Shown: positions 9,796-63,189 of the stretch, piece after piece
How the letters are laid out: each line of letters opens with the position of its first letter
Numbering within the stretch: the first letter of the stretch is position 1
Sequence record: MK250017.1
Reading direction: 5' to 3' (one strand)
Length of the DNA: 64,000 nucleotides
Program-made: the position numbers and the translations under genes
Notes under the pieces: generated by a model
The model's input: only the letters and a program-made list of their open reading frames with translations
The model's database searches: none
What the model was told of the DNA's origin: nothing

Positions 9796-11034
9796 TTATT
9801 GTTTATTAATCCATTCTTTTACTTCATTAATATTCCAAAATTCTATATAATTCAAATTATTCTACTATGATATATTCCTTTTTTTCAAATCTAATATAGT
9901 CCATGTATAAATAATATTATCATATTGTGACTTCTTACCATTTTTATGTGCATTAGAATTTTCTGCTTTTTCTTTTAAGTTATTCAGCTCATTTAAATCA
10001 TATTCATTATTTTCATTAAATGGATGATAATGATGATAATGAGATCCGTTATATTCAATATATAAATCTAATGATGGTATATAAAAATCACAATTAAATG
10101 GATACAATTCTGATTTATATTGTCTAATACAATCTGAATATTTTTCTTTTAATAAATCAAAACATACATCTTCTTGATATGATATATTAAATGAATTATT
10201 TAATAATTTTGTATTATAAATTTTTTTCTATATTTCATTACTACTTAATATAGATGAAATTAAATTTTTATAGTATTGTGTCTANNNNNNNNNNNNNNNN
10301 NNNNNCTTTTCTAAACATGTATTTTTTATTTTATCTTTTACATATTTAAGTTGACCAATATTTACGATACTATTAATATCATCTTCATTAGAAGCATATT
10401 TTTTAATACATGTATCTAATGACTAATTTCGAAATTTTTGAACTTTAAATACAGAATCAACCCCATACTTTTCTAAACATGCTTTATAAGTTTTTTCTAT
10501 TTTTTCAGGAATCTAACCTGTATACTCAACACCATATTTTTGTAAACATGTTTCTTTTGATTTTTGTTTAAATATTTCAGATTTTAAAGGGGATGTTACT
10601 CCATATCTTTGTAAACATGTTTCTCTTGCTTTAATTCTATTAGAATAATGTTCATCTCCATATTTTAATAAACATGTTTCTCTTATTTTATTATTAATCT
10701 CTTGCTTTTTATCTACATCACTATATATGTCTTTTAATACTTTTTTAACTGTTATACCATCTAACATATTTGCATGTTCTTTACAACATGTTTTATTAAA
10801 TAATTGATTCTTTTTACCATTCAAAAATTTAACAGGTTTTCCACAAATAACACATACAGGGCGAACCTCTATATTATACTGTATTCTCTTAATTGTTTCT
10901 CTTAATGACTATGAATCAGTATAGCGATTATCTAAATATTCCTTATACCCCTCAGAAATATTAGTTAATCGCTATACATTTATATGTCCATTAGATTTAA
11001 TAAAATAATCTAATATAATCTAATCTGTTACCAT
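9796..11034 (-). CDS. Homing-endonuclease-like PD-(D/E)XK (Vsr/DUF559-type) protein, TAG=Gln, spans an N-gap
   Basis: One frame from ATG 11034 to TAA 9796 through at least 9 TAG and a 21-N gap. N-terminal CVICG...TCC, repeated ETCLxKYGV units, C-terminal CDFYIPSLDLYIEYNG..H and NLNYIEFWN. Confidence 0.8.
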
Positions 11035-11036
11035 AC

Positions 11037-11882
11037 TTAATAATTTTCATTTTTAGGTTGATCAACCTTATCATAAGTACCATATTTTACAAAATACTTA
11101 TTGAAATCGCAAGTTTTAACTTTGAAGATAATTCGTTCACCCTTACGTGTCTTCAAGCCCATAGGTGTACGAAGAACTAGTCCTTCGGCAAGATGCGTTT
11201 CTTCTGCAATATTAGAATTAAATCCTTTCTTTACATATTCAATTGCTTCATCAATAGTAAACTTACCTACAAATGGAACAATATTTACACCAAGTTTATT
11301 GAAAATTTCATCTCGATTTTCACGGAGAAGATACATATCATCTACCTTCACATCAAATCCAATAAATGAATTATCTTTTCTATAGTATCCACCTGATTGA
11401 ATTCCTGCACCAAATCCTTCACCATACAATGTATATCTCTTTGGAATTTTTGTTTCATCAAGTTCATATACATTGAATTGTGTATTAAGTACAGACCATG
11501 TTTTTTCTTGCATTAGTTCATCTGTTACATACATTTCCTTAGAAAGACCCAATGCATTCAATACCTTATCTTCTGTCAATTCAGTTGTAAGATATGCATA
11601 CAACATCTTTGGGATCTGTGCATTATCAGTCTTTCCATTATATGTAACATTCCACTTAATACCAATATTATTACCAATGTCTGATGTGATAAATTCACGG
11701 GTTACTTCAATTCGAGTATTAGTTCCGTCTACCTTCTCCTCTGCATCAAACTTGCAATCCCGCAACCATTCCAACTCAGGTACTGCAAATTCATCATAAG
11801 GCATGATTACATTATTTGCATCTCTCTTAAAGATTGTGTTAATCTTCTGATAAGTATTCTCACTTCTTTTCTGCTTACCCAT
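11037..11882 (-). CDS. RNA ligase, Rnl2-type nucleotidyltransferase, 281 aa
   Basis: Motif I EKVDGTN, LYGEGFG, FIGFDV, EGLVLR, IFKVK. TAA stop, no TAG. Confidence 0.88.
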   Translation of the reverse strand: MGKQKRSENTYQKINTIFKRDANNVIMPYDEFAVPELEWLRDCKFDAEEKVDGTNTRIEVTREFITSDIGNNIGIKWNVTYNGKTDNAQIPKMLYAYLTTELTEDKVLNALGLSKEMYVTDELMQEKTWSVLNTQFNVYELDETKIPKRYTLYGEGFGAGIQSGGYYRKDNSFIGFDVKVDDMYLLRENRDEIFNKLGVNIVPFVGKFTIDEAIEYVKKGFNSNIAEETHLAEGLVLRTPMGLKTRKGERIIFKVKTCDFNKYFVKYGTYDKVDQPKNENY

Positions 11883-11941
11883 AATTTAATAATATTTTAT
11901 ATGATTTATAATGTTTATAAATTAGATTTAATAAAAAGTCT

Positions 11942-12115
11942 TTATACTGATAATTTTTCAATTTGTTTATCAGCAGATCTTGCAAGAGATTTAAATCTAC
12001 CGATATAATATTTTATGACTTTATCAACATATTCAATGTTTGTTGTTTCTTGATAATCGTTCCAGAAATTATCACATAAATCTTTCGCTTTTTCAGAATA
12101 AGTTTTCTTTTTCAT
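11942..12115 (-). CDS. Hypothetical protein, 57 aa
   Basis: MKKKTYSEKAKDLCDNFW...; ATG..TAA, below the track cut-off. Confidence 0.55.
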   Translation of the reverse strand: MKKKTYSEKAKDLCDNFWNDYQETTNIEYVDKVIKYYIGRFKSLARSADKQIEKLSV

Positions 12116-12122
12116 TTTTATA

Positions 12123-12299
12123 TCATTTTACCTAAAATAACTCATATGGTACAATATCATTCTCTTTAATTTCAATAGCATTACATGTATGAACATACTC
12201 ACCATGTTTTTCCATAAGTGAACGTGCTTCTACATCATCAATAGCATTTACTATAAAAAGTCCTCTATCTGTTTTTACTTTATATAATGTAATATCCAT
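12123..12299 (-). CDS. Hypothetical protein, 58 aa
   Basis: MDITLYKVKTDRGLFIV...; one TAG three codons before TGA. A TAnnTTTG promoter lies 43 nt upstream. Confidence 0.6.
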
Positions 12300-12340
12300 A
12301 ATTTTATTATTTTAATTTACTTCAATATTTTATTAACATC

Positions 12341-12351
12341 ACAAAGATACA
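12341..12351 (-). promoter_or_regulatory. Bacteroidota-type -7 element, copy 3
   Basis: TGTATCTTTGT on the minus strand. Confidence 0.7.
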
Positions 12352-12416
12352 TAAAATATTTGAATGAAAAAAATATTTTCAATAAATATACAAACAATTA
12401 TTTAGTTTAATTAGAA

Positions 12417-13154
12417 ATGTTATTAAATAATCTTGATCAAAATTTTGTTATTGCATTAGATTTCAATTGGTTTTATCCTGATGTTACTGAAAAATGGATG
12501 CCAATATTAAATAGAATGTATTTACCATACATGACATTAGAAGATTTCTTCAATGCATAGATTGCATCTATAAATTTTCCAGGATTAAATTCAGGTACAG
12601 TAATATAGCAAGGAAGAGAATATAAAATTCAGAAAAGACCTGGAAAGCAGGAAGATATGTTATTGGAAAAGACATTAACATTAACTGTTAAAACAGCAGA
12701 AAGTTATATAAGTTATTTTGTAGCAAGACATCAATATGATTTATATTTAAGATTAGGATAGTTAACACCTTTATACCTTCCTAATATATCTGTTTCTTTA
12801 TTGGATGATGGCGGTTTTGAAACAGTTACATACTGTTATTAGCAATTAACACCGACAAGTATAGGTGATTTATCTATGTCATATGCAGCTCGTATGGGTT
12901 CGTTTAATACATTTACATGGTCTTTTGTATATAACTATTATGATGTATATATTAGAAATGGTAATGGTGAAAGAGAATTAATATCTAAAGAATATGATCC
13001 TTATAAAGATGGAAATAGTGAATTTCTTGATTTGGATGATTCTAAATATTCATCAAAAATACATCCAGGTATTTCATCTAAGGTAAAGATTAATAAATTA
13101 CAGTCTTTATCGAGAAGAGTTCCTGGTTAGATAGGGGTTAATCTAAAAAAATAA
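12417..13154 (+). CDS. Tail-tube-fold protein (T4 gp3/gp19/gp54-like), 245 aa, TAG=Gln
   Basis: ATG 12417 to TAA 13152 through 5 TAG. QIASINFPGL and PTSIGDLSMSY...FNTFTWSFVYNYYD resemble tube/terminator proteins (product call is inference). Confidence 0.6.
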
Positions 13155-13166
13155 TTTAATAATAAT

Positions 13167-13420: not shown

Positions 13421-13426
13421 CTTTTA

Positions 13427-14905
13427 TTATATATTAAATTTAAAATTATCTATTTTATCTGTTATATTTGTTATATTACAACCATTTTTTTCTAAAAGTT
13501 CTTTTGCAGATTGATATACTTTACTGTAATCTTGTTCTACAAAAGTACGTAAACTTGTGAATCTGAATTTTAAACTATCAATTTCCTATGCTATTACTTC
13601 ATGAGAAACACCCGATTTATTTTTTCTATCAATATATTTCTAATATTGTTCTATTACTGAAATTGATAAATCTATGCATCGTTGTACTTTTAAATTTAAT
13701 ACTATTAAACAATCTGCAATTGATTTAAATGAAAATACAAGTTGATCATAATGTCCTCTACCGTATGGTCTACGTTCTCGAGTAGTAAATAATAAAGATG
13801 TATCACTACCATATGTTTGTCTTATCATACTTGCATAAATACCATCACAATTTACTTGATTCCAATAACTTACTAGTTTAAATTCATCAAATTTTTTATT
13901 TGTTAATATATCATTATCTAAATCCTGTAATTCCATATTAACATCAAAACATATATCCATAAAGTTATTAACGTTTTTTATAACTTTTGAATCTAAACTT
14001 TCCTATTTCCTGACTTTTAATATTTGTCTATAACGTTCTATATTTTTCTTATTTAAATTAGTCTATGAAAATACGAAATCTCTATATTCACGTCGATTAT
14101 TTAATTTATTTGTTATGTCAATATTATCCATATATTTTGGATCAACAACATAAACTTTTGTTATAGCTGTTATTTTCTGTAATGACTTTATATTATCAGC
14201 GCCTAATTCTTTTTTTATATCAGAAGAAGATGTCAAAACATCATATACAGGAATCTTTGTAAATGCTTTATTTACAAAATCTTCAACTTTCTTTGAATCT
14301 GTTGCAAAATAAGTTATATCTGTTTTTTCATTATAATTTTTATTTGGTTCCAACCAAGAATTATAAGGATTTGCAGATGTAATATATAATATAATTTTAT
14401 TATCTATTGTTACTGCTCTTAATTGATCTTCATAATCTACCCAAAACTATATACCGCTTTTATATATTTTTTTCTTTGCTTCTTCTGGCGTTATTGTTAA
14501 TAACTGTGTATCTGTAATATCTGATATACCTAAATTATGATCAGCTTTTGCTTTAAGCATACGATTAATAATACCAATAATAGTATTATCTATATATGAA
14601 CCATCCCATTGTTTAGTTTTCTATTTTTTCGTATATGTACATTTAATAACAGACTATCTTCCTTCAACTGTATCACACATTTCCTATGTTAATTTACCTT
14701 TAGATGCTAGTCTATCATATTTCATAACAACATAAAAAAAATCTGCTCCTTCATTTCGTTTCATATATCCTTCATCTCTACATGGACTTAATGTTAAATT
14801 AGATCTGTCAAATTTATGTAGTAAAGATGAAAGTGTTACTGAATTTAATGATTCATTTATATGTTTTAATTTTTTTGCTATATATAAAACTTCACTTAAT
14901 AACAT
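13427..14905 (-). CDS. Hypothetical protein, 492 aa, TAG=Gln
   Basis: Track fragments 14684..14905, 14063..14353 and 13640..13960 share one frame, joined only by TAG. Ends TAATAA. Confidence 0.85.
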
Positions 14906-14976: not shown

Positions 14977-16572
14977 TTATGAAAAATTAACTTTTTGTTC
15001 ATATACAGGGAAATGTTGTTCCATATATATTTTCTTTCGTTCTTGTCCATGTCTCCAGAGATAATTATCTTTATATCGTTTATTAGGATCTGCTGAAAAT
15101 CTTATATCATCGACAAAATCAAATATAACAACTTTATCTTTTCCTGGATACAAACGAATTCCTCTACCACATATTTGTCGTACAAGACGTTCTGATTTTG
15201 CTGTATCAACCAAAAATATAGACCATAGATTTTTAATATCAATACCTTCACCAAATGTATTAATAGATGCAACTATTACTGTATTACCAGATGTATCTTC
15301 TTCCATGCATTGTTTATAATAATCCCTTGTTTTATTTGGTGTATTTCCGTCTGTATAATAAACGTCTTTAGATGAATTATCTTTTATATAATCATATACT
15401 TTTTTACCGTATCCATATTTAATATCACCGAATAAAACTAATGCATTTTTCTTTGTATTAATTACCTGATCGCAAATATATTTCAATCTTGTATATGATT
15501 CATTAACAGTTTTTCTTTCTATCTTAAGAACTTTGCTTCCTGCTGTTATATCCATCGGATTTTTATTTGCTCGATATATATACATTGTTTCTTTAGTCTG
15601 CTGATCTGCCCATTTAAGATATTGAATTACTGCATATATAGGTGTTCCTCTTTTCTCTGTATTAATCAATTGATCTGCTGTTAATTTATAAACAACTGGA
15701 CCTACTACAGATTGTATATAAAGATTTTCATACATTGTTTCTTTTGGAAATGTACCTGTTACACCAATTGAATATTTTAAATTAGACATATTATATAAAA
15801 TATTCTTTATTGAAGCTGCATTTCCAAGATGGTGACACTCATCGCATATACACCCACCAAATCTATCAAAGAATTCTTTTTTACGCTTACATAAACTTTG
15901 GAAAGTTCCAAATAATATATTGCATGATTCTACTTTAGCTTTCTGCTTCTTTGTTAAACCAGAGCGAAGAATACCAATTTCCCAATTATGATTATGCTTC
16001 TTTAAATAAGATTCATAACGTTCATACTGAACTGCTGATTGATTTGCCAAATCAACAGATGGTACAATATATAGAATATTATCTATACCCTGTGTATCTA
16101 TGAGATATTTGAATATCATGAATGATATTAAAGTCTTTCCACCTGATGTTGAAATCTCACCACAACACTTTTTATATTTCAATAATGTATACGCTGCCTT
16201 TACTTGATAATCATATGGTTTAAATTCTTTTCCTTCTTCATTTTCTGCACCTTCAAAAATATCATCTATATAACTCTTAAAATCTTCAAACTTTAATTTA
16301 AACTAATTTAAAAAATTCTGTGCAGCTGGAGTCATTTCCATTGCTATATTGAACTTTTTAGCAACCTTAATAATTTCCAACCACAAATTAGTAGAGATCA
16401 TATTATACTTATTCATAAATTCTCTATCTGTAATTTGTATGTCGGTAATCTTCTTTAACATCCATGCATTAGGTATTTCCCTTGTAAAAGCTCTACGTAT
16501 AACATTCAATTCAAATATATAATCTGAACTAATAACAAAATAATTGTTATCAAATGTTATATCAACTTTCAT
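14977..16572 (-). CDS. uvsW: UvsW-like SF2 helicase, 531 aa, single TAG at codon 90
   Basis: Track ORFs 16303..16572 and 14977..16182 are in frame across one TAG. Q-motif PYDYQ, Walker A STSGGKT, DECH, TGT, TFGEGIDI, QICGRGIR. Confidence 0.88.
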
Positions 16573-17225: not shown

Positions 17226-18206
17226 ATGAATAATGGTTTAAAAGAATAGTTACATGATATATCTATTCGAACAATGATCGGATAGCTTCCAAAAATTATT
17301 AATGATAATAATACAAAGATTTGTGATTATATTGATAATATATATGATTCATCAAGTAAATGTATAACTAAAAATATTGATAATGTATCAGATAATAAAT
17401 CATATGTTAAATCTAATTTAGGTTAGTTTAAAAAACTTATTGTAGAAGATTTTGAAACAAAAAATATAAAAAGTTTAGAACAAGTTATTAGATCAGGTGG
17501 TTCTAATAATGAAGGTATAAATCATGATGCATTAAACGGTCGTTATCTTTATAATGATGGTGGATTATTGAAAACAGTTCCATATGATAAAATATCTCCT
17601 GATATGAATAAGTATGCACATAATTCTGGTGCTATAGGTGTTACATTAGGAAATGGTACTGTTTAGTCATTAGCAGATACATTAGAATAGATTATTAATA
17701 GTGTCGATAGTTTAAAGAAACAATTTAGTTAGAGTTATTCAGAAGATGAAGGATATATTGGATTATATGGTGCAATTAATAATATAAATAATCAGTCAGT
17801 AAATAATTCAAATTCATTCACTTTTGATTAGAGTTTATTATTTGCTACTAAATTATAGTTAAAAAGAATGAATTTACCATAGTATCAATATAATGATATT
17901 ACTCAGGGTTTTATTTATACATATTATGATTATGCAAATACTGTTACTATAAATGATGAGAATACTTCATCTATAAAAGGAATTACTGGTTCTATTGTTA
18001 AATTAAGATTTAATGATACTAAATCAAAAGGGTTTTATAGAGTTATATTATCAAGAGAAGAAAAGAAATTTTTACGAATATCAAAAGATGAATTAAATAG
18101 AATTACATTAAAGTGTATTAGTAATGATGAACAATTTGGAGCATCATGGGATGTATTGGATTATTCTGTTCGTTCTGCTGATGATATTATGATTGAAAGA
18201 AAATAA
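17226..18206 (+). CDS. Hypothetical (probable virion) protein, 326 aa, TAG=Gln
   Basis: Absent from the track. ATG 17226 to TAA 18204 with about 9 TAG and no TAA/TGA. Confidence 0.8.
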
Positions 18207-18226
18207 AATTATTAGTTTAAGAAATT

Positions 18227-20098
18227 ATGATTAGAACTCCTTTATTAAGACCATTAAGAGATAATGGTGCTACTTTATATGTTTTTCCATCTGCTAATGA
18301 AGATATTGGTTTAAATTTAAACAGCAGAGCAACAGGTGTTGCAATGTCACATTATGCATTACTTAATTTACCTGTAATGTTTGGTAATACAGATCCAAAA
18401 TCAGAATCTATAGCTATTGCAACTGATTTATAGAATTATATGATGAATCTTGAATGTACATTATTAAATCAAGATTCATATAATTATCAGGAATATCATA
18501 CTGTTTCAGAACGAGCATTTTTTCATTGGCTAAAAAGTTTCGGAACAAGACATATTAAAGATTCTAAACTCAATTTAGACCGAACACAAAATAGTAATGA
18601 TGTTTACTATAAAGAGACAGATAATACAAATAGAGTAGTATAGTGCTTTGGTGCAATAGATGCAGGTAATTCATTAAGTACAGAATTTGGTATGTTTAAC
18701 GAAACATATGTGAATATACCTACAAGTTATGGAAATGGACCTGTATTTTTTAAATAGGTTTAGGATACATCAGAAACAAATTATATATATGGTAAAACAT
18801 ATAATACTGGTGATTCAGAGCATTTACAGGGAAGAAAGAATAATGTAGATACATTAAAAATATTATCAGATGTAAAACCAAAATATGATAGTGGTACTTC
18901 ATATACATTGAATGATGCATATGAGATTGTAAAAGATATTAATGAAATATAGTCTGCATGTAGAGCATTTACTAATGATAAAAATATTCAAATTAATTCA
19001 TATGATGATGTGAATATCGATTAGAAAACACAGTTCAGTGGAAAATACTGCGATATTACATCAAATCCATGTGAATTCGGTTTTAATGCAATACTTTTAT
19101 ATTATAGTGTTTATGATTAGAATGATACAACTAAAACTGCATATGCTATAAATTTGTTTGGTATTGTATTTTTAGATTCACCATCAAGTGTATAGAATGG
19201 ATAGGCAAAAATACCGTCTTTAATTAAGAAAAAATCATTTGGCGGTGCAAATAAAGCAAATTTCTTTGGTAACAGTTATTCATTCCGTGTTAATATAAAA
19301 ACATTATCTGTATATGACAATACAGATGCAATGATTTAGGATAATACAACAATGTCTTCTATTAACAGTGTTGATTTTTCTGATGTTGTTAGCAATCTTA
19401 ATAGAGCTATTGATGTAATGAATACGAATGTACAATCAACAATGGCTATACAAGATGCGTATATGACAACACTTAAGTTGACTGATGAAAATAAGTAGAA
19501 ATTATAGGAATTAGAAGCTAAATTAGATGGTTATTTAAATGGTTCAAAAACATCTGGTATAGTTTCATAGAATATACGAACAAAGATTATTCAACCTATT
19601 ACAGATACATCAATAGATTCAAGTGTTAGTGATGGTAATAATATAATTAAAATTCAACTTAATAAGCAATTAACTGATTTTATTAACACTGAAGAATATC
19701 AAGGTTCAACTTATACACCACCTATTAAAATATTAAATGATGAATATACTTATAATGTACCTACTGTATATAAACCTATTTTTAATGTAAGTACACAAGC
19801 TGATACTGCATTAGGAGAATGGTCTTCAGATACAGGAGATATAAATGACATTATAAATGGAATAGACGTTAATTATTATACATATAACAATAATGTATAT
19901 CCAAGTATAGAATTACCACAATATGTATTGCAGGGATTTGGATTTGATAAGTTAGTATACAGAACTGGTGATCTAAATAATGATAATGAAAAGGATACTA
20001 CATTTTTGAATTATGAATCATTGATACCATTAATGATAAAATATATTCAAGATTTAAATAAGAGGATAAAAAACTTAGAAAGTAAAAATAACGGATAA
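18227..20098 (+). CDS. Virion/tail protein with C-terminal intramolecular-chaperone-like coiled coil, 623 aa, TAG=Gln
   Basis: Continuous frame through many TAG. C-terminus LNYESLIPLMIKYIQDLNKRIKNLESK resembles the end of peptidase S74 chaperone domains. Confidence 0.75.
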
Positions 20099-20106
20099 TA
20101 TTTAAA

Positions 20107-22368
20107 ATGAGTACAAATAATAATATAAACAGTTTTGCAGAAAATATGCGAAAAACGATTGCATAGCAAACTAATGAACTTTCATTATTATCCGCTATGC
20201 AAAGATCATTAACAACAAATGATACTTTCGTTACTTATGAATATCAAGATACATAGGGAACAAATTCAAGATATTAGTTACCAAGTTATGCGTCTATTGT
20301 TAATCGATTAAAATCTGTTGAAGAATCTCTTAATACAATTTCAACTGGTAAAGGTACAATTAACCTTAATGACGGTTCAAGAAGAACAATTAAATTAAGT
20401 TCAATACCAAAAACACCAGATTAGATAAATGGTTTACAGGACCCATCAACATTTAAATTAGATACAAATTGGTTTTTTGAAGATTTAATGTTTCCTGGTT
20501 TAACAGTTGATATTGACTTAACAGGTTAGATAGATGATGATGCTGATAGAGTTAAAGTTGTTAGAGTCATTCTTAATTCTAATGATGATGCGGCAACAAC
20601 ATTATGGAATAATCAAATATCTACTAAAACAACATATGATTATCTTTCATTAAAATCATTATTAGCAAACAGTAATATTTCTTATTCAGAAGATGAAGAA
20701 ATTGTATAGTTACCTTTAGTAAGAAATACAAAATCTGGAACATTTCAGATTATACAAGATCCAGATATTATTAACGGAAATGTATGGTATACATTAGACA
20801 GTATAACATATTCTACTATTTCAAGTGAAGGTATTGATTAGGGAAAGAATAATATATTATCTATTGGTGATTAGTTATCATACAGTGATTCTATTTTTGA
20901 AATTATTGCAATTAATTAGAACTCAAGTAAAGTCAGATTAAAACGAATTGTAGGTGCAGCATTGCCAGGTGTTTATGCAACTCTTAACTATTATGAAGAT
21001 CCGTTTAGAAGTAAAATAATTTCAGTAAGAGTAGGTGCAAATGAATATGATATTATATATGTAAAAGGAATTTCTGAAGCATATAACTTATAGGCAAATA
21101 CATGGTCAACACCGGTAAGAGTAGATACAAATAATCTTTTATATGAAGATAGTAACGGTAATGTTACATCAACGTCATTAACAGAATATTACAGTAATTA
21201 TGTAGTTGACTGGGGTGCAAAGATGATAGATGAAGCTAAGGAAAGAACTGTTACTGCATGGAGTGGACAAAAACCAAATGCGCCAACATTATCTGAATCA
21301 GATATGAGAGTCGTTCAGGTTAATACACAGATTAATGCTGCAATTGATACAACAACGATTAAGAATACTGCTGCACTTATAGCAGATGATAAGACAAAGA
21401 TAGATAGCCTTAAATCAGCCATAGCGGACCTCAAATCTGAATTATAGAATATTACTAACATCAGTGATTATAACGCGAAACAGGAGCAAATAAACACGCA
21501 AACATTAGAGTTATAGAATGCTCAGTCAAGTTATTCAAGTAATGTTTCTGCTTTTTAGTCAGAAGTAAGATCTAATGGTGCTTTATTAACTGATCCTAAA
21601 TATAGAATTAGAGGGTTCTTCTCTGTACCAGTATAGAAAACACGTATTGGAAATTCTGGTTTATAGGAAGAAATTATAGGTTTTGATATTGCTTACCGTT
21701 ATGTGAAAGAAGATAATACACCAGTATTATTAAATACATTCACTTATAATGATTAGAATACAGGATCAAGTGTTACAGGTACTTTTTCTGATTGGAATAT
21801 TTCATAGTCTTAGATGAAAACAAAAGTAAATGACGGTAATGGATATAAGTGGGTAGTAGAAAATGTTGCAGATTCTACAGAAGTAAATATTAATCAGATT
21901 GATATACCTATACAGAAAGGTGAACGTGTAGAAATAAAAGTAAGATCTATATCAGAAGCAGGTTATCCATCAAATCCTTTAAGATCTGATTGGTCTAATT
22001 CTATTATTATATCATTTCCTGATAATCTTTCATCAACTAATGAAATTGCAGATTTAATTAAAGATGTTAATGATGACGCATTAACTATTGCTATTAATAA
22101 TACATTAAGTTCATCTGGTGTAACATCACATTTAGACGATACAATACCAAACAGTAATTCTGTCAATGGTTTGTATTTTAAACATATTGCAAAGAATATT
22201 GCATATGAAAATACAGATGAATCAACAGGAACAAAAGTTATTACTTCTATATCATTGTAGGATAAAGTAGATTCTATTGATAAAGAATTTGATAATGTCG
22301 GATATTTGGGTGATATTGCAAGTATTAATTACATTAATTATGATATTAGTGTATCAGAAGATGAATAA
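20107..22368 (+). CDS. Virion structural protein with coiled coil and FN3-like C-terminal domain, 753 aa, TAG=Gln
   Basis: Continuous frame. Heptad region ...KIDSLKSAIADLKSELQ...; VEIKVRSISEAGYPSNPLRSDWSNSII is FN3-like. Confidence 0.8.
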
Positions 22369-31103: not shown

Positions 31104-31105
31104 AA

Positions 31106-36047: not shown

Positions 36048-36049
36048 AA

Positions 36050-41568: not shown

Positions 41569-41570
41569 AA

Positions 41571-43243: not shown

Positions 43244-43290
43244 TAATATCATATTTTCATGAATAAATAAGTTAAATGAAAATAATTTGA

Positions 43291-44508: not shown

Positions 44509-44510
44509 AA

Positions 44511-46432: not shown

Positions 46433-46807
46433 ATGATTAGAGAATTATATTGTAAATTACCGACGGATCTTGATTATGAACCAATGGTTGAGTCTACTGA
46501 TGAAATATTTAATCTATTACAATAGATAAGAGTTGTTCTTGGTACAAAACCTGGAGAAGTTTTAGGAACACCAATGTTCGGTTGTAATCTTGAAAAATAC
46601 TTATTTAGAATGAATCTAGATAAAGATGAAATTCTTACAGCGATAAGATAGGAAATATTAGATTATGTATATTATGATTCTAATAAATGGAATTTATCTA
46701 TAGATGTTTTATTCGGAAAAAATGCGAATGATCCATATGAATATGCATTAATAGATATTAGTATAAATGAAAAGAAATGTTTAGGTATTATTGTAAATCA
46801 GCAATAA
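46433..46807 (+). CDS. Baseplate wedge protein (gp25/GPW-like), 124 aa, TAG=Gln
   Basis: LLQQIRVVLGTKPGEVLGTPMFGCNLEKYLF. Absent from the track. Confidence 0.85.
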
Positions 46808-52583: not shown

Positions 52584-52624
52584 AAAAAGACTGAAGGATT
52601 TTGCGATTATCCTTCAGTCTTTTT
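52584..52624. terminator. Bidirectional terminator
   Basis: AAAAAGACTGAAGGAT/ATCCTTCAGTCTTTTT stem overlapping the end of the convergent gene. Confidence 0.85.
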
Positions 52625-53320
52625 ACTTTCTTCAAATTTCTTTCTATATATTTCTTTTTTCCAGTCTTGTACTTTTAATGTAGTATCTTTAGTTGAAGTT
52701 TCACGTAAATCCATATTACTTTCATTATGAGATTGCTTTACTTCTTCATATGTAACTTGCTATGGTTCCTGATTTGTTATAGTTGGTTTTAATTTACGAT
52801 TAACTCCATTATCTTCAGCAATAAGGTCTTCATCCTCTTTATGTTGTAGATCAAGATATGTATCAATATAGTATTTTCTAAATTGATTTTGCATTTCATT
52901 AATCTACTTATTAAAATCTTTAGCAATAGACATTAATTTTGTATATGAATCAAATAATTTTGCAGATGTATCTCCTTTTGAAATTGTATCCATAATTACT
53001 TTAATCATAACATTATTCATGCTCTACTGATAGTAAAGTTGACCAAGCTAATCAGCATCCTATAATATTTTATCTTTAATAATAGGATTTTCCTAATATG
53101 CAGCAGGTACAATTGTATTAACAATCTATTTAACTGATTTTAAAGCTTTCGCAGTATCTGCAGACATTACTTCTTCATGTTCAACAACAAATATCGGATC
53201 CGGTTCTTGAAGCTCATCAGGAATATCTGTATCTATATCATTAGCATCATAATTTCCTGGTTGTGATGAAGCAGCTGCAGCTAAACTACCTAACTAACTC
53301 GCTATATCTTTTGCTTTCAT
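52607..53320 (-). CDS. Hypothetical helical protein, 237 aa, TAG=Gln (terminase small subunit-like is a weak guess)
   Basis: Absent from the track. ATG 53320 to TAA 52607 through about 8 TAG. Helical core ...TISKGDTSAKLFDSYTKLMSIAKDFNKQINEMQ. Confidence 0.7.
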
Positions 53321-53341
53321 TTTTCTTTAATTAAATTATTT

Positions 53342-54439
53342 TTAAACTAATGTAGATATAAACTTTTGCATATTCTTATATGTATGTAAATATTTTGGAG
53401 CAATTTTTTTATATACATAATGCATGTAGTAATCATTAATAAATGCGCTTAATTTTGTTCCAAATGTTTTATAATCAACAGCATCTGTAAAATAGTTTAT
53501 ATAATTCTTATCAAATAAATCATTCATCTGTTTAATTGTTTTATCAGATGGATTACATTCATTTAATGTATTTGTTATATAATAAAATAATTTTATAGGA
53601 TCTTGTCCACATAATCCATTTATTGCTTGCGAATAATTACCGAATGTTTTATATACAATAGCATAACTGTAAATAAAACATGCATAATCATTATTATTCA
53701 ATGCAGGAGTTTCTATATATTTTAATATATCATCTTTAGTTGCATTTGGATTCTTTTTTGTATATACCATCATATTTTGAACAAATGAATGATACCATGC
53801 ATTTAATTCAGTTGGTTGTGAAACATAAAGAAAAGTTTTTAATGATTTATATGTTGTATCATTCTTTAATAATGCTTCTTTTATTTTTTCTTTAAATACT
53901 TGATTGTTAATATCAAATTCATCAGCTATTAATGTAATATGAAGTAATTCTTTTAATGGACCTCCAAATACGCCCATTATATTATCATAATAATGTCTAA
54001 GTTCATGATATACATATTCTTTAAGTTCATCTGTTAATTCTTCTTTATTACCTGTATAACCTTTAAAAGTATTATAGTTAATATAAATATAACCACAATT
54101 ATTTTTCTTTTTATCTACTGTAGAATCAACAGGTGAATAAAATGCGGCTTCATCATCATCAATAAATCCTTGAAATTTATAAGATGTATTAACTTTATCT
54201 GTATCTATATTAACTAATATAACTTTAATAAAACCTAATTTAGGATTATCTAAATCAAATGTAAATGTATGATAAAGAAAACCTTCAAGATCTTTCACAT
54301 TAGGTTTACCTTTTACTTCGTAATTAGTATCCCAATGAATATCAGGAGATGTCATAAATTCAACCATTGAATTTACAACATTATCTAAATTAAATTGTTT
54401 CTAATCGATATATCCTATTTTTTCTGTAATTGATTTCAT
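53342..54439 (-). CDS. HEXXH zincin-like protein, 365 aa, one TAG at codon 13
   Basis: YVYHELRHYYD plus downstream PTELNAWYH. In-frame ATG at 54439 extends the track ORF. Confidence 0.7.
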
Positions 54440-55508: not shown

Positions 55509-55527
55509 TTCTGTTTGCAAACCATTG

Positions 55528-55599
55528 TGCTCTATACAGGGATCGAACCCGTGATCTGGAAGTTTAAAATTTCCTGCTGTACCGCTTAGCTAATAGAGC
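55528..55599 (-). tRNA. tRNA with UUA anticodon (ochre/amber suppressor type)
   Basis: GCTCTAT/ATAGAGC acceptor, A73, D-arm GCT..AGC with GG, anticodon arm GGAAA-TTTTAAA-CTTCC (anticodon TTA, A31xC39 mismatch), T-arm ACGGG-TTCGATC-CCTGT. CCA not encoded. Confidence 0.88.
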
Positions 55600-56079: not shown

Positions 56080-57566
56080 TTAAATAATTCACTTATAACA
56101 TATATAACTTTAATATTATATATGACATATATATGATTTGTCTGAAGTGAATCTAGAAAACTACAGATTAAACTAATCTATAGAAAGTCTATATTTAATT
56201 TTAGACTTTTTGAAGAAGTAATATAGTTCAATCAAATCCTTGTATGTAGGTTGTAAATTAAATTCTTCCAACGACTCAAGATACAACTTATTAAACATAC
56301 TCAAATTCGGTCTTATTATATTCTTTTTAATTTCTTTTGTTTTACTTATATATTGATTATAAAACTCATAACCACGCCTACCTATTTCTATTGATGCTAA
56401 TATCATATCAGGTAAATTTAATGAACGATATAGAAAATTACCAATAAAACTTGAATATTCTGGTTTAACTTTTAATAACTTAATATTATGAATATTACAA
56501 CGTTTAGTTAAATTATTCACAAATGTTGTTCTACACCATGAATTATTAACCAATTTATTAAAATATACACCTAAATCTTTATCTGAAGTTTTGATATTTA
56601 AATTCTCTATAGAAATAAGTTGACATTTATAATATATAGATTTATTAATTATATTCTTTACAATTTGTAAAGTCTCATAATTTCTCTTATCTGAAATATA
56701 TTTTCTTTCATTTGAATCAGATGAATATCCTTTATTCTTTAAATTAAAATCTTTATCATTCAATTTTTTAATTGAATAAATACCTGATTTGATAACATCA
56801 AATTCATTTTCAGATTTCCAATCAACAATAGACCATCCTATATAATTAGGATTTAAATCCAAAGATAGTACTCTATTTTTTATAAATTTAGTTTCATAAT
56901 TATAAACATCATTTTCTTCAAATATCACATAAATATATTCTAAATCTAATTTATATGCAATCTTTATTTCTTTTCTTTCTTGTTTCTAATATAGTTTAGA
57001 TAATATCTACTTTCTTTTATTTAATCCAATTAACCATAAATTTATTTTTGTATGTTTATTTGGTTTAAATATAATATTTTCTAAATCTTGTTCTATGTGA
57101 AATTTTCTATTTCCTTTAACTGATTTATTAACTATTTCACCTATTGAATATAAAGCCGATAATCTTTTCTACTTAAACTATTCTTTTGAAATATTGTTCT
57201 TTAATCTCTAAAAATAATTCTTCTTACTGCCAAATATAATTTTCTATTTCTTTGGTATATCATAGAAAGAACATTGAATAAACCAACTATCTAACAAATA
57301 TATATTGTTTAATGTTTTTATTTGTTGTTTTATATCTTTCTAAGATTTACCTTCCTATACTCTATTGTATACAAAATGCTGTACAGAACTATACTATTTC
57401 ATATAATTCCGTATAATATCTAATGATTGTTCATCCGTTCGATATTTAATCTTTAATACTTGCATTTTTAATTGTATATAATATTATATTCTTTTATTAT
57501 TTATCTGAATAATTTTAAAAAATAATAAATTCTTATAAAATATAAATTATAAGGTATTATTATATT
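56080..57566 (-). mobile_element. TnpB-only element B (about 1,487 bp) inserted in the RNA ligase gene
   Basis: Lies exactly between ligase codons ...GTG TAT AA | T ATT AAG. Left flank TATAA, right end TTTAA, subterminal hairpin CTTATAA-N8-TTATAAG. No tnpA. Confidence 0.82.
56116..57465 (-). CDS. tnpB: TnpB-like RuvC nuclease lacking the Zn finger, 449 aa, 11 TAG=Gln
   Basis: RuvC-I VLSLDLNP, RuvC-II ISIENL, VKPEYSSFIGN...LPDMILASIEIGRRG (RuvC-III). The track shows only the TAG-free middle. Confidence 0.78.
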
Positions 57567-57768: not shown

Positions 57769-59137
57769 TTAAATAACAGTATGTTAAAACTTGAACAAAT
57801 TTGAACTTTGCTCTTTATTAACTTCTTGCTTCACTCTATCACTACTTTTTAGGTTCATTTCTGAACGGTCATCCATAGTTGGATAGTCCACAAGCTTAAA
57901 TTCGGGTGTACTGCACCCTATTATTCTTAAACCTTCATCAAGTATATTTAGTGCTGCATTGTAATCTCTATTAATAAGTTTACCACAATTAGGACAGGTC
58001 CATTCTCTATCACTCAATTTTAATTTCTTAAAAATATAACCACAACAGTTACATGTTTTACTTGATGGATAAAATCTATCTACAAATACTATCTTTCTGT
58101 TATACCATCTTGCTTTATACTCTAATATTCTTCGGAATTCACCAAAATTCATTTCTAAAATACTTTCAGCAAGTTTATGGTTCTTAACCATACCTTTCAC
58201 ATTTAAGTCTTCCATACATATAACTTGGTTTTCGTCAATGAGTGAATTACTTACATAGTGAAGATAGTATTGTTTTCTATCATTTATTGTTTTATATACT
58301 TTAGCAAGTTTAATTCTTGCTTTATTTCTGTTGTTACTTCCTTTTTGTTTTCTTGAAAGTTGTTTTTGAAGTTTATTTAACTTAATTATCTCATTCTTTT
58401 TAAAATGTAAGTTATTGAATACTTCTCCTTCTGATGTGATGATAAAATCTTTTACACCAAGGTCAATACCTACACAATTATCACTATCTTGTAATCCTTT
58501 ATGTATTAAATCACCATCAACCAATATTGACAAATAATATTCACCGCAAGGTAGTTTAGATAATGTTGCTTGTCTAATATTATCATGATGTTTTTGTAAA
58601 TATTGTACATATTTTTTATTACATCTGAACTTAATATTCTTTATATTAGCAAGAGATAACTAATATGTTGTATAATCATTCTTTCTTGAGATGGTACCGA
58701 TTTCAAATCTACAGCTTTGTTTGTTATCATGTTTTGATTTGAATTTTGGATACCCTGTATGTTGTTTAAAGAAACGTTTATATGCATCTAACATATCCAT
58801 TATAGATTGTTTAAGAACTTTTGTATTCTGTTCTCTGAGCCATATAAAATTATCATCTTTCAATAGTTCATGATGAAACCAATAACTGAGTGTAGATCTG
58901 TTTTCAGAAATATTATGTTCTTTATATTGATTTATTTTTCGAGCAAGTGTTTGATTATATACAAAACGACAACAACCAAGCAACTTATTAATTTGTGTTG
59001 CTTGTTCCATATTTGGGTATAATCTTATTTTTATTGCTCTTAACATAATTTATTTTTTTGTTTATTTCTTTTTTCTCTTATTTATTTAAATAATTTTTAT
59101 AAAAATGTACAATATTGTTCAAATTATTTATTTACTA
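57769..59137 (-). mobile_element. TnpB-only element A (about 1,369 bp) inserted in the RNA ligase gene
   Basis: Lies between ligase codons TTA A | TT CCT. An 11-bp direct repeat TGTTATTTAAT (59137-59147 and 57768-57778) makes the exact border slide. No tnpA. Confidence 0.85.
57784..59046 (-). CDS. tnpB: IS605-type TnpB nuclease, 420 aa, one TAG=Gln
   Basis: N-terminal KIRLYPN.EQ...GCCRFVYN, GIDLGVK (D), CMEDLNV (E), SSKTCNCCG/CPNCG Zn finger, NRDYNAALNI (D). Track ORFs 58660..59046 and 57784..58533 join across one TAG. Confidence 0.92.
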
Positions 59138-59671: not shown

Positions 59672-60646
59672 TTATTGATGTAAAATAATTTGCAATTTAA
59701 ATACAAGTCCTAATAATGTCACAAACTTATCAATAGATGTTGCAAGCATAGAATTATATTCTGCTGTTGCAATAAGAATAAGTGGAAGTTTATTTCCAAA
59801 TTGTGGACATGTTGTTAAAATAAAATCAGGAAAATCTTTACCGATTGCAAGAACTGCATCATCTGCACGTGTAGACCAATCAGCAACAAGTTTCTTATAA
59901 TTATTTACAGGATCTGGTTTATCTATAATAAGTTTAAAAAGATCTGAACAATCATATGTATTTGATAACATATCAGCTGATAATTCTTTTGCCCCTCTTG
60001 TATAAAGATTCTGAATCTTATTTAAAAGTGAACGCATATCAGGAAATGAACTTCTAACAAATGATGTTACTGTTTCATCTGTATATTGAATATTAAATTT
60101 TGTTAATATATATTTAATACGCTCAAGATAACCATTAAACAAATAAGTTTCTTCTTCTTTAGTAACAGGATCTATTGCTACAAGATTAAATCTAGATTGA
60201 ATAGGTTCTGGTACTTTATCAATATAATTACAGTTTGCAATAAATCTTACAGTTTTATGATATTTCTCAATAGTAGCACGAAGAGCTTTCCATGCTTCAA
60301 GTGAAAGTCCGTCACACTCTTCAAGAACAATAACCTTTAATTTTTCTTCACCAGAAAACAATGAAGATTGTGAAGCAAATGCGATAACTTTATCTCTAAT
60401 TGTATCAATACCATTTTCAAGTGATGCATTAATTTCCAAAACTGTATAACCCTTTGATAATATGCGAGTTAATGTTGACTTACCAGCACCAGGAGATCCA
60501 GCAAATAAAATATTATTTGTTAATCCATGTTGAAGGACTTCTCTAATTCGTGGTACAATAATTGCTTGATCCAATGTTTGTGGTCGTAACATTTCAGTAA
60601 ACAACTTCTGTGTTACATGAGTCTGTGTTGTATTATTATTTTCCAT
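59672..60646 (-). CDS. Sliding-clamp loader AAA+ subunit (T4 gp44 / RFC-small-like), 324 aa
   Basis: RPQTLD, GSPGAGKST, INAS.E.GIDTIR, VLEECD, FIANCN, IQSRF. No TAG. Confidence 0.92.
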   Translation of the reverse strand: MENNNTTQTHVTQKLFTEMLRPQTLDQAIIVPRIREVLQHGLTNNILFAGSPGAGKSTLTRILSKGYTVLEINASLENGIDTIRDKVIAFASQSSLFSGEEKLKVIVLEECDGLSLEAWKALRATIEKYHKTVRFIANCNYIDKVPEPIQSRFNLVAIDPVTKEEETYLFNGYLERIKYILTKFNIQYTDETVTSFVRSSFPDMRSLLNKIQNLYTRGAKELSADMLSNTYDCSDLFKLIIDKPDPVNNYKKLVADWSTRADDAVLAIGKDFPDFILTTCPQFGNKLPLILIATAEYNSMLATSIDKFVTLLGLVFKLQIILHQ

Positions 60647-60680
60647 ATATTATAGTAATTAAAATATACCTTATTTAAAT

Positions 60681-60824: not shown

Positions 60825-61646
60825 TTACTTTTCACCAAGAGCTTTCTTTACCTCTGGATCTTCATCTGCTGCTGAAGCGGTAATAGCTTCATGGAATTCA
60901 ATAAATTCTTCAATATCAGAAATCTTCAAATTCATCTTCAAACCAGCATATGCAAGATTTACACGTTCCTTCAAAATAGTCAACTTCTTATCAATATTAG
61001 AAAGTTGCTTTACTTCAAGATTAATCTTCTCAAGAATACCACTATAAGTTACAGGAATATCTTCCTCAAATGCCTTTCCTGTTTCCTCATTATAATTCTC
61101 AAACTTCGCCATCTTTCTTGCGGTTTCAATTCCTGTACCCTTAGGATCACCCATACTCTGATACAAGAAAATCAATGTAGAATAATCGATTTCAAAATCT
61201 TTATCTTTATCAGCTTCAAGTTCTGTAATAATCTTATTAATTACCTTATCAAACTGAATCAAACCACGCCATGATCCTTTTTCCCATGTATTAAACTCTG
61301 CATTCCAATTCTTAAGGAATGTTGCAGTTGTTAATGCAAGTCCATCATCATGTGTTGCAATCAAATACTTCTTATTTTTATTCTCTTCAAGGCATGTTTC
61401 AAAATCTTTCTTTGCTGCTGCAATATCATCATCAGTTGCATTTACTGGATCAATTTCTGCCCATTTAGAAAATTTCTTATTAAATTCTGCACGAACAGTT
61501 GCACGTGCATATTCTTTCTGTTCTTCTGACATCTCAGGAATACCAGCCTTTGTAAGTTCATCTTCCTGCTTTACTGGAAGTTTCTTTGTATCTTTAACTT
61601 CATCAAGCTTTGCTCCCTATTCAACTGTAATCTTTTTCTTTGCCAT
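60825..61646 (-). CDS. Hypothetical acidic protein, 273 aa, one TAG at codon 10
   Basis: MAKKKITVEQGAKLDEV... extends the track ORF upstream through one TAG. Confidence 0.8.
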
Positions 61647-61683
61647 TTTTGACTTAATTTACATGATTTTTTTATTATTAAAT

Positions 61684-61712
61684 ATTATATTACATAATAA
61701 TTTAATAGTCTA
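61684..61712 (-). promoter_or_regulatory. TAGACT-N17-TATAAT promoter
   Basis: Begins 4 nt after the tnpB stop and faces the 273-aa gene. Confidence 0.65.
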
Positions 61713-61715
61713 AAA

Positions 61716-62921
61716 TTAGTTAAAATTTTTTTTAACTGGATTCATCACTAACCCTCTATTTGTTGGAGATATAATCTCTTCACAAACTACATTTAAATAT
61801 TTTCTAAGTATATTTAAACTTCCATTTATATCTGCATTAATTAATATATTATTAGTTACATATAATCCTCTCTTTATACGTTTTCCTGAAAAATTATAAT
61901 GTTTATAATCTGAATTACATACTGGTATATAATCATTATCAAAAAATGATGCTTTACTTGTATATGATTCTTCTTGTAAAATAACATTAATTCCTTGTAA
62001 TTTACATTTATATTTTAACATATTAATTAGTATTTCAAAAGGAATAGATACAAAATTTTGATTATTTTTATTACCTAATTTAGTCTCTTGTTTCCAACCA
62101 TTATTTTTACCTATAATTAATGTATTAATGGATTGTTCAACTAATTGATTAACTATATATTTAGATACTTTATGAAAATAATCTTTAATTTTATTATTTC
62201 TCTTTAATGATAATCTATATAATCTATTTGACTAGTTCTTATGATTTTTTAATTTTAATTCTGATTGAAATTTTGATTTTTGCTTATTATAAAATTGATT
62301 TATAGATTTAATAGGTTTTCCATTTATAATAAATGATTTAGTTACATTAGAAATACAAGTGCATAAATTATCTATACCCAAATCTATAGACATATACCTA
62401 TGATTATCAGATTTTATATTTTTTTCTTTTATTTCATAAATTACTTCAAGTAAAATATAATTATTACGAGGTACAATACGTACTTGATTAATATTATTAT
62501 GTTGTATTTTAAATTGTATATTAGATTTTGGTAATTTGAGTATATATTGTTTTAATAAATTAGGAGATAATGTCATATGATTATAAATAACAACCTATCT
62601 ACCTTTTGTTTTATCAAGATAATTTGGGATTTTCGCATTTACTTTTTTATATGAATTAAAAAATGATTTATAATTCCAATAACATAATCTTATTATTTGC
62701 TAAGATGTATTAGCTGGTAATGACCTATAATCTATTTGATTTTCATTTTGAAATTCTTTACATAACTTATAATAATTTTTAAATGATTTATCTTTAAAGA
62801 ACTATATACGTATTCTATATAATGCTTGATTATATAAATTTTTTGATAAAAAACATAAATTATCAAGTTCATTATATCTTTTATCATTCTTTTTTATTAT
62901 ATGACGTTCTACTAATTTCAT
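61716..62921 (-). CDS. tnpB: TnpB nuclease (IS200/605-related, no Zn finger, EESYTSK type), 401 aa, TAG=Gln
   Basis: MKLVERHII...SKNLYNQALY...NTSQQII, MSIDLGIDNL (D), IIGKNNGWKQ, QEESYTSKASFFD, INADINGSLNI (D). Four TAG. No tnpA nearby. Confidence 0.88.
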
Positions 62922-62925
62922 ATAT

Positions 62926-62954
62926 ATTATATGATATAATATTAAAATAGTCTA
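62926..62954 (-). promoter_or_regulatory. TAGACT-N17-TATAAT promoter of the third tnpB
   Basis: TAGACT 62954-62949, TATAAT 62931-62926. Confidence 0.6.
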
Positions 62955-62979
62955 AAAATAAAAGGTAAAGAAATAAAAA

Positions 62980-63189
62980 TTATCTCTTTACCTTTACAAA
63001 CTTACCTATTTTATTTTTACTACAGTCTGAACAACTTATAATCATATCCTGATTCTTATCAAACTGCTTATCAAAATTTTTTATCTATTTTGCAAAACTA
63101 TACATAGTTCCATAATATTCTATATTCTATGAACCATGTCCCTATGTCCACATTCCTTTTAAAAAATAAATGTTTCTGTATTTCTTCAT
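62980..63189 (-). CDS. Hypothetical protein, 69 aa, TAG=Gln
   Basis: ATG 63189 to TAA 62980 with 3 TAG. Not in the track. Confidence 0.55.

What the first reader, a model, noticed from the sequence alone, without database searches (positions are those of the whole stretch)
9796..63189. Window-wide reassignment of TAG to glutamine
Seen: frames of up to 7.5 kb are interrupted only by TAG, and all gene ends checked are TAA/TGA. TAG falls where Gln fits: TnpB NTS[Q]QII, gp25 LLQ[Q]IRV, collagen-like G[Q]QGKQG. Established: code 15 is known in Lak megaphages and some crAss-like phages. Consequence: standard annotation fragments or misses most structural genes here.
Basis: partly seen in the sequence, partly recalled or inferred. 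Interest (0 to 1): 0.65.

Follow-up and report, generated by a model that had tools for sequence, protein, structure and literature searches.

The report
Lak megaphage reads TAG as glutamine

Summary

- **Identity.** Window 17226-42000 is 100.0% identical to Prevotella phage Lak-A1 (MK250015.1). Code 15 (TAG = Gln) was described for this genome by Devoto et al. 2019.
- **Open frames.** In 9796-63189, ORFs of at least 100 aa cover 36% under table 11 and 92% when TAG is sense. The 36 ORFs of at least 150 aa hold 234 in-frame TAG. All 35 complete ones end in TAA (32) or TGA (3).
- **Residue.** Glutamine is the best-fitting residue at TAG positions. This holds against relatives with no in-frame stops and against recoded Lak relatives. 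In close relatives TAG mostly swaps with CAG or CAA.
Two of three hold (gp25, TnpB). The collagen-like one is uninformative.
- **Machinery.** It lies outside the window in the same genome: a Gln-like tRNA(CUA) 9.3 kb upstream, and release factor 2. No phage GlnRS or PylS was found. A complete 673-kb relative without in-frame TAG has neither suppressor tRNAs nor a release factor.
- **Gaps.** Neither N gap affects the result. Gap 1 lies inside a homing-endonuclease gene whose two flanks match one family colinearly; gap 2 is intergenic.
- **Open point.** The window's only tRNA has anticodon UUA. It is structurally conserved, and the literature leaves its role unexplained.

The parts
1..9795 (-). 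Block with no in-frame TAG, readable by the standard code. It includes DnaK/Hsp70 (1127-3097), a SAM-lyase-like gene (3272-4141) and seven other ORFs. G+C is up to 34% against 25% for the window.
9796..11034 (-). Homing-endonuclease-like gene (DUF7487, phrog_3339) with 9 TAG. It contains N gap 10285-10305.
11037..11882 (-). RNA ligase, TAG-free
12417..13154 (+). Tail-tube-like protein (phrog_45), 5 TAG, ends in TAA
13167..13397 (+). Small conserved gene of 76 aa with 1 TAG. It is a separate gene, not a read-through extension of the tail-tube ORF.
13427..14905 (-). 492-aa protein with no family match, 8 TAG
14977..16572 (-). DEAD/ResIII helicase, 1 TAG
17226..22368 (+). Three genes of the structural block: 326 aa (9 TAG), 623 aa (13 TAG) and 753 aa (19 TAG). 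The last matches phrog_29329, and a source names one relative 'tail fiber protein'.
22471..29970 (+).
29976..34921 (+). 375-aa ORF (7 TAG) and 1271-aa ORF (17 TAG). The second begins with a short G-X-Y run at 31151-31171.
35349..42233 (-). Four genes: DNA-end-protector-like (5 TAG), 949 aa (17 TAG), 905 aa (14 TAG, ends in TGA), and 220 aa with a weak RuvC-like match (3 TAG)
42389..46427 (+). 284-aa ORF (4 TAG), tail-fibre protein (8 TAG) and baseplate wedge subunit (phrog_219, 12 TAG)
46433..46807 (+). gp25-like baseplate wedge protein with 2 TAG. The Pfam GPW_gp25 match scores 24.9 bits, just under the 27.2-bit cut-off. TAG at residue 31 sits at a conserved glutamine.
47167..52581 (+). 1804-aa ORF, 31 TAG
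52607..54439 (-). 237-aa ORF (8 TAG) and 365-aa ORF (1 TAG)
55527..55599 (-). tRNA with anticodon UUA, cognate to UAA and by wobble possibly to UAG. It is the only tRNA in the window and lies in a 1.7-kb stretch with no ORF of at least 150 aa.
56116..57465 (-). 449-aa ORF, 11 TAG
57784..59046 (-). TnpB (IS605 OrfB family), 1 TAG
59672..60646 (-). Clamp loader, TAG-free
60825..61646 (-). 273-aa ORF, 1 TAG
61716..62921 (-).

Best explanation
The window is Prevotella megaphage Lak-A1 (window coordinate w = MK250015.1 coordinate w + 234677). In this phage TAG is a glutamine codon, and only TAA and TGA end genes (NCBI table 15).

Shown here:
- The frames are open only if TAG is sense.
- TAG behaves like CAA or CAG in alignments.
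- The same genome carries a tRNA(CUA) with tRNA-Gln features, 9.3 kb upstream of the window.
- The same genome carries a release factor 2 gene with no in-frame TAG.

Inferred from published work and general knowledge:
- The host, Prevotella, uses the standard code.
- During infection the phage tRNA(CUA) is charged by the host GlnRS, since no phage GlnRS was found.
- The charged tRNA out-competes host RF1 at UAG, while phage RF2 keeps termination at UAA and UGA.
- Genes free of TAG (DnaK block, RNA ligase, clamp loader, RF2 itself) can be translated before the switch. TAG-rich genes, above all the virion genes, can be translated only after it.
For: - Identity to Lak-A1 is 100.0% over 24775 bases.
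- ORF coverage goes from 36% to 92%, and controls with TGA or TAA as sense do not reproduce this.
- There are 234 in-frame TAG, and every stop is TAA or TGA.
- Q ranks first by log-likelihood at TAG positions in relatives with no in-frame stops, in recoded relatives and in close relatives.
- The conserved Q of gp25 and the TnpB positions agree.
- No in-frame TAA appears in any alignment to 63 related loci.
- tRNA(CUA) lies at Lak-A1 225330-225401(-). It has U1-A72, G2 and G3, its D arm is near-identical to that of the phage tRNA-Gln(CUG), and that tRNA is its nearest relative among the phage tRNAs at 60%. An identical copy is in the nearest IMG/VR record.
- RF2 scores 406.5 bits against TIGR00020 (cut-off 370) and is open under table 11.
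- Natural control: a complete 673-kb relative at 49-61% protein identity has no in-frame TAG. It has only 5 tRNAs, none a suppressor, and no release factor.
- Published: Devoto 2019 (PMC6784885), Crisci 2021 (PMC8346664), Borges 2021 (bioRxiv 10.1101/2021.08.26.457843).
Against: - There is no peptide evidence. The amino acid is inferred from alignments and tRNA shape only.
- TAG positions are less conserved than CAA or CAG positions: 33% against 45-51% aligned with Q in Lak relatives.
- The early/late split is not clean. A homing endonuclease (9 TAG), a TnpB (4 TAG), a helicase (1 TAG) and a DNA-end-protector-like gene (5 TAG) also use TAG. Borges et al. note that Lak replication genes are mostly in the alternative code.
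- Charging by host GlnRS is untested.
- The conserved tRNA(UUA) has no place in this scheme.
Confidence: 0.94

Rival explanations
1. TAG is decoded ambiguously or by a second route. The window's tRNA(UUA), which looks more like tRNA-Lys than tRNA-Gln, would read UAG by wobble and insert lysine or another residue beside glutamine. Alternatively it would be the main TAG reader in Lak genomes that lack a tRNA(CUA).
For: - The tRNA(UUA) is a good tRNA (57.7 bits).
- It keeps its acceptor stem through three two-sided pair changes between Lak-A-like and Lak-B-like lineages.
- Its nearest relative among the phage's tRNAs is tRNA-Lys(UUU), at 64%.
- K is the second commonest residue at TAG positions in relatives with no in-frame stops.
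- Crisci 2021 found it in 51 of 51 Lak genomes, but a TAG suppressor in only 38 of 51.
- The relative without in-frame TAG lacks it.
Against: - K is no commoner opposite TAG (10-14%) than opposite the window's own CAA or CAG codons (8-11%).
- Q beats K by 11 to 120 nats.
- A UUA anticodon would also suppress TAA, which ends 32 of 35 genes here.
- No in-frame TAA is seen in any alignment.
- The one candidate TAA read-through proved to be a separate gene.
Confidence: 0.05
2. TAG is pyrrolysine or another non-glutamine residue. ARAGORN labels the CUA tRNA 'tRNA-Pyl'.
For: Only ARAGORN's label, which follows from the anticodon alone.
Against: - No PylS is found in the 541-kb genome.
- The tRNA(CUA) has an ordinary, Gln-like cloverleaf.
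- Aligned residues favour Q.
Confidence: 0.005
3. TAG is a true stop, and the long frames are decayed or split genes, or assembly errors.
For: None beyond the table-11 reading itself.
Against: - There are 234 TAG but no internal TAA or TGA in about 20,000 codons.
- Homology runs straight through TAG positions, both in relatives with no in-frame stops and in recoded relatives.
- 15 independently curated Lak genomes share the pattern.
Confidence: 0.005

Closest known systems
Prevotella phage Lak-A1 / Lak megaphages, genetic code 15 (Devoto et al. 2019, PMC6784885; Crisci et al. 2021, PMC8346664)
   Same: It is the same genome: 100.0% identity over 24.8 kb. The published features were all re-found here. 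These are TAG as Gln, low coding density under code 11, TAG-free regions longer than 5 kb, TAG-rich structural regions, a CTA-anticodon tRNA, RF2, and a TAA-cognate tRNA of unknown role.
   Different: Nothing of substance. Small additions made here are the per-gene TAG map of this 64-kb stretch, the Gln-like features of tRNA(CUA), the Lys-like look and compensatory changes of tRNA(UUA), and a complete relative without in-frame TAG that lacks both suppressor tRNAs and RF2.
TAG- or TGA-recoded gut phages: crAss-like, Garnet, Amethyst, Agate, Jade and others (Borges et al., bioRxiv 10.1101/2021.08.26.457843)
   Same: A stop codon is used as sense mainly in structural and lysis genes. The phages carry suppressor tRNAs and sometimes a release factor. 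The hosts use the standard code.
   Different: In Lak, many replication-type genes also use TAG (here the helicase, homing endonuclease and TnpB). The late-gene switch model therefore fits less cleanly.
E. coli amber suppressor supE (tRNA-Gln with anticodon CUA) and the lysine ochre suppressors supG/supL (tRNA-Lys with anticodon UUA); from my own knowledge, not tested here
   Same: A tRNA-Gln-like body with a CUA anticodon inserts Gln at UAG. A tRNA-Lys-like body with a UUA anticodon reads UAA and, by wobble, UAG.
   Different: Those are partial suppressors in a cell that still uses all three stops. Here TAG makes up about a third of glutamine codons across the window's ORFs (234 TAG, 338 CAA, 133 CAG).

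Membership tests
NCBI genetic code 15 (TAG = Gln; TAA and TGA stop) | In-frame TAG inside conserved genes | tested here: met
   There are 234 in-frame TAG in 26 of the 36 ORFs of at least 150 aa, and homology runs through them.
NCBI genetic code 15 (TAG = Gln; TAA and TGA stop) | TAG aligns with glutamine in homologues | tested here: met
   Q ranks first by log-likelihood in relatives with no in-frame stops (11 nats ahead) and in recoded relatives (58 nats ahead). The gp25 and TnpB positions agree.
NCBI genetic code 15 (TAG = Gln; TAA and TGA stop) | TAA and TGA remain stops | tested here: met
   All 35 complete ORFs end in TAA or TGA. No in-frame TAA occurs in any alignment. The candidate TAA read-through was rejected.
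NCBI genetic code 15 (TAG = Gln; TAA and TGA stop) | A cognate tRNA with anticodon CUA | tested here: met
   It is not in the window. It lies in the same genome at MK250015.1 225330-225401(-) and is Gln-like.
NCBI genetic code 15 (TAG = Gln; TAA and TGA stop) | Glutamine found at TAG positions in peptides | not testable with these tools
   No proteomic data are to hand.
Lak megaphage (Prevotella phage Lak-A1) | Sequence identity to the type genomes | tested here: met
   Identity is 100.0% to MK250015-18, 99.4% to Lak-A2, 95% to Lak-C1 and 81% to Lak-B.
Lak megaphage (Prevotella phage Lak-A1) | Phage-encoded release factor 2 | tested here: met
   TIGR00020 scores 406.5 bits against a cut-off of 370, at MK250015.1 368058-369194.
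Recoding as a late-gene switch (Borges et al. model) | TAG confined to late, structural or lysis genes; early genes and the code-change genes in standard code | tested here: inconclusive
   Virion genes are TAG-rich. DnaK, RNA ligase, clamp loader and RF2 are TAG-free. However, the helicase, homing endonuclease, TnpB and end-protector-like genes carry TAG. No timing data were examined.

The most novel reading that the evidence does not exclude
The conserved tRNA(UUA) at 55527-55599(-) would not be a relic but part of the recoding machinery. On this reading it is a Lys-like or otherwise non-Gln tRNA that reads UAG by wobble. That would matter most in the quarter of Lak genomes with no detectable tRNA(CUA). 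Phage RF2 together with host RF1 would shield UAA from it. TAG would then be decoded by two tRNAs, possibly with two amino acids.
Probability: 0.12. Interest if true: 0.5.

Novelty: already known. Interest (0 to 1): 0.1.

Why it matters
As a discovery it does not matter: TAG-to-glutamine recoding of Lak-A1 was published in 2019 and extended in 2021-2022.

It matters in practice because the public record of this genome carries no annotation. Any pipeline using table 11 will shatter the virion genes here, with coverage of 36% against 92%.

The one open biological point that touches the window is the role of the universally conserved TAA-cognate tRNA.

Tried and rejected
- **TAA read-through.** The tail-tube-like ORF 12417-13154 is followed by 81 open in-frame codons after its TAA. 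In Lak-B7 that downstream piece is conserved, with differences mostly at third codon positions, but it sits in a different frame from the upstream ORF and starts with its own ATG. It is therefore a separate 76-aa gene. It has no PHROG match.
- **A TGA-recoded relative.** Locus L022 showed 4 in-frame TGA. They align with Y, H, C and Y in weak alignments of two non-structural genes, and window TGG does not align with TGA. I make no claim from this.
- **Pyrrolysine.** No PylS is present.
- **A phage GlnRS/GluRS.** None is present.
- **A CUA-anticodon version of the UUA tRNA body.** An exact-pattern scan of IMG/VR, with the first anticodon base left free, found only the seven Lak-A/B-like contigs already in hand. 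The four I checked carry TTA.
- **L025's tRNA(CUA).** It sits at a similar distance from the baseplate gene, but its sequence is unrelated to the UUA tRNA.
- **The collagen-like example.** Only one relative aligns, and it has AAA.
- **Tandem stops.** The median distance to the next in-frame TAA or TGA after a gene end is 7 codons. I ran no control, so no conclusion is drawn.
- **Calls that failed for formal reasons.** (no whole genome is held; query one base too long; unlisted hit ids; wrong coordinates; report lacked one field).


Full report
**What the window is.** The window is AT-rich (25% G+C). Its 753-aa ORF at 20107-22368 first pointed to Prevotella Lak megaphages. The 97.5% protein identity seen there merely reflects the 19 TAG codons, which tblastn read as stops. 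At the DNA level, window 17226-42000 is 100.0% identical to MK250015.1 (Lak-A1) 251903-276677. It is 99.4% identical to Lak-A2, 95% to Lak-C1 and 81% to Lak-B genomes. Window coordinate w therefore equals record coordinate w + 234677. The public record has no annotation. No whole assembly is held for the window, so I used the Lak-A1 record for genome-wide questions. I kept away from the two positions that correspond to the N gaps.

**Check of the observation.**
- Under table 11 there are 27 ORFs of at least 150 aa. With TAG as sense there are 36, including ORFs of 2499, 1804, 1271, 949 and 905 aa.
- In 9796-63189, ORFs of at least 100 aa cover 36.4% under table 11 and 91.9% with TAG sense.
- Making TGA sense changes little (38.3%). 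Making TAA sense only produces 109 short overlapping ORFs, the longest 481 aa.
- The 36 ORFs contain 234 in-frame TAG beside 338 CAA and 133 CAG. All 35 complete ones end in TAA (32) or TGA (3).
- Positions 1-9795 hold no in-frame TAG. This block includes DnaK, a SAM-lyase-like gene and others, and has a higher G+C. The RNA ligase, the clamp loader and ORF 63194-63688 are also TAG-free.

**The assembly gaps.**
- Gap 10285-10305 lies inside ORF 9796-11034(-).
- On each flank exactly one frame is free of internal TAA or TGA, and it carries 5 and 4 TAG respectively.
- The 5' flank matches homing-endonuclease family phrog_3339 at profile positions 28-237. The 3' flank matches the same family at positions 237-324.
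- The flanks are thus consecutive parts of one gene, and each shows TAG-only interruption on its own. The 21 N keep the frame as written, but the true length is unknown and was not looked up.
- Gap 16912-16942 lies between the divergent helicase gene and ORF 17226. No ORF of at least 40 aa crosses it.
- Neither gap bears on the conclusion.

**Which residue TAG stands for.** I fetched 63 related loci:
- three cultured standard-code phages;
- four Lak-like contigs found through the 753-aa protein;
- 56 IMG/VR loci around the baseplate wedge gene.

Every window ORF, with X at TAG, was aligned to them by tblastn, and the subject codons were read off. Loci fall into two groups: those with in-frame TAG (Lak lineages) and those with no in-frame stop at all.

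- In the second group, 76 window TAG positions align with a sense residue. Q is the commonest (18% against a 3.7% background). It ranks first by BLOSUM62 log-likelihood (11 nats over K) and by an empirical matrix built from the same alignments (6 nats). The spectrum is nearly that of the window's own CAA codons: Q 18%, K 14%, N 12% for TAG, against Q 18%, N 11%, K 11% for CAA.
- In recoded Lak relatives of 44-81% identity, counting only their sense codons, 154 positions give Q 33%. Q is 58 nats (BLOSUM62) or 120 nats (empirical) ahead of E.
- In close relatives, 81 of 131 TAG-to-sense differences are with CAG or CAA. CAA is two substitutions from TAG, so mutational proximity alone does not explain this.

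- The gp25 TAG (residue 31 of ORF 46433-46807) is CAG or CAA in 25 of the 29 relatives that lack TAG there, down to 31% identity.
- The TnpB TAG in NTS[TAG]QII aligns with Q in a TAG-free homologue, as do two of that gene's three other TAG codons.
- The G-X-Y run at 31151 has a single aligned relative, with AAA, so it is uninformative.

**How it is likely done.**
- The window holds one tRNA, at 55527-55599(-), and its anticodon is UUA, not CUA.
- Across the Lak-A1 record, Rfam finds 33 tRNA matches. ARAGORN on the clusters finds a tRNA(CUA) at 225330-225401(-), 9.3 kb upstream of the window start, beside tRNA-Gln(CUG) and tRNA-Gln(UUG).
- The CUA tRNA has U1-A72, G2 and G3. Its D arm is nearly the same as that of the phage tRNA-Gln(CUG), which is its nearest relative among the phage tRNAs (60%). 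An identical copy sits in the nearest IMG/VR record.
- The genome encodes one class-I release factor. It scores as RF2 (TIGR00020 406.5 bits, cut-off 370; RF1 models fall far below their cut-offs) and has no in-frame TAG.
- No GlnRS/GluRS catalytic domain and no PylS were found. Charging by the host GlnRS is therefore an inference.
- A natural control supports the link. A complete 673-kb relative (direct terminal repeats, 49-61% protein identity) has no in-frame TAG in 1973 aligned codons. It carries five tRNAs, none a suppressor, and no release factor.

**Comparison with the literature.**
- Devoto et al. 2019 (PMC6784885) reported all of the following for Lak-A1 and A2: coding density below 70% under code 11; TAG probably repurposed to glutamine (code 15); large TAG-free regions; structural genes in TAG-rich regions; a CTA-anticodon tRNA; and RF2 in all complete genomes.
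- Crisci et al. 2021 (PMC8346664) aligned terminases and found Q opposite TAG in 75-85% of consensus cases in the 26% G+C clades. A TAG suppressor was present in 38 of 51 genomes and a TAA-cognate suppressor in 51 of 51, 'with no other evidence that TAA is recoded'.
- Borges et al. (bioRxiv 10.1101/2021.08.26.457843) proposed that recoding regulates late and lytic genes. They noted that in Lak the replication genes are mostly in the alternative code.
- My per-gene counts agree with that last point. The helicase, homing endonuclease, one TnpB and a DNA-end-protector-like gene all carry TAG.

**The tRNA(UUA).** This is the only element in the window that the accepted scheme does not explain.
- It is a sound tRNA (57.7 bits).
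- Between Lak-A-like and Lak-B-like lineages, three acceptor-stem pairs change on both sides and stay paired. That argues for a functional molecule.
- Its nearest relative among the phage tRNAs is tRNA-Lys(UUU) (64%), not tRNA-Gln.
- I looked for signs that TAA is read through and found none. There is no in-frame TAA in any alignment. The one long in-frame extension after a TAA, at 13155-13397, is a separate small gene, as Lak-B7 shows.
- K is not enriched opposite TAG relative to CAA or CAG.
- Its role stays open. The reading that it helps decode UAG by wobble is possible but unsupported.

**Verdict.** It is a re-reading of the genome in which this recoding was described.

Noticed in passing
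window 55527-55599 (-): tRNA with anticodon UUA (cognate to the stop TAA) in a 1.7-kb stretch with no ORF of at least 150 aa. Three acceptor-stem pairs differ on both sides from the Lak-B-like copy and stay paired. It is nearest to the phage's tRNA-Lys(UUU). It is published as universal in Lak genomes but has no known role.
   Followed up: partly
window 13167-13397 (+): Small conserved gene of 76 aa just after the tail-tube-like ORF. In Lak-A1 it is in the same frame as that ORF, so it mimics a TAA read-through extension. In Lak-B7 it is in another frame.
   Followed up: yes
window 1127-3097 (-): Full-length DnaK/Hsp70 (697 bits) in a stretch of 32-34% G+C against 25% for the window. It uses CAG far more than CAA (21 against 3), unlike the rest of the window. 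It looks like a fairly recent acquisition from a cell.
   Followed up: no
window 57784-59046 (-) and 61716-62921 (-): Two diverged TnpB (IS605 OrfB) genes 2.7 kb apart, with 1 and 4 in-frame TAG. Hundreds of homologues of about 70% identity exist in metagenomes, some with more TAG (9 in L073) and some with none (L074). The element has evidently moved among, or adapted to, recoded genomes.
   Followed up: partly
G002 (IMGVR_UViG_3300021431_000075, 673114 bases; locus L018): Complete relative with direct terminal repeats and 49-61% protein identity. It has no in-frame TAG, only five tRNAs (no suppressor) and no release factor. It is a natural control for the recoding machinery.
   Followed up: partly
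L025:21094-21169 (-): A Lak-family relative (53% identity in the baseplate gene) has a Gln-like tRNA(CUA) with an encoded CCA end. It sits at about the same distance from the baseplate gene as Lak-A1's tRNA(UUA), but its sequence is unrelated to it.
   Followed up: partly
L022 (IMGVR_UViG_3300029967_000162): Four in-frame TGA appear in weak alignments to two non-structural window genes, opposite Y, H, C and Y. This is probably alignment noise or broken genes rather than TGA recoding.
   Followed up: partly
window 38896-41613 (-) and 41571-42233 (-): The 905-aa ORF is called from a TTG start that overlaps the upstream gene by 43 bases, so its true start is probably further in. It also overlaps the next gene by 4 bases at its TGA stop.
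   Followed up: no
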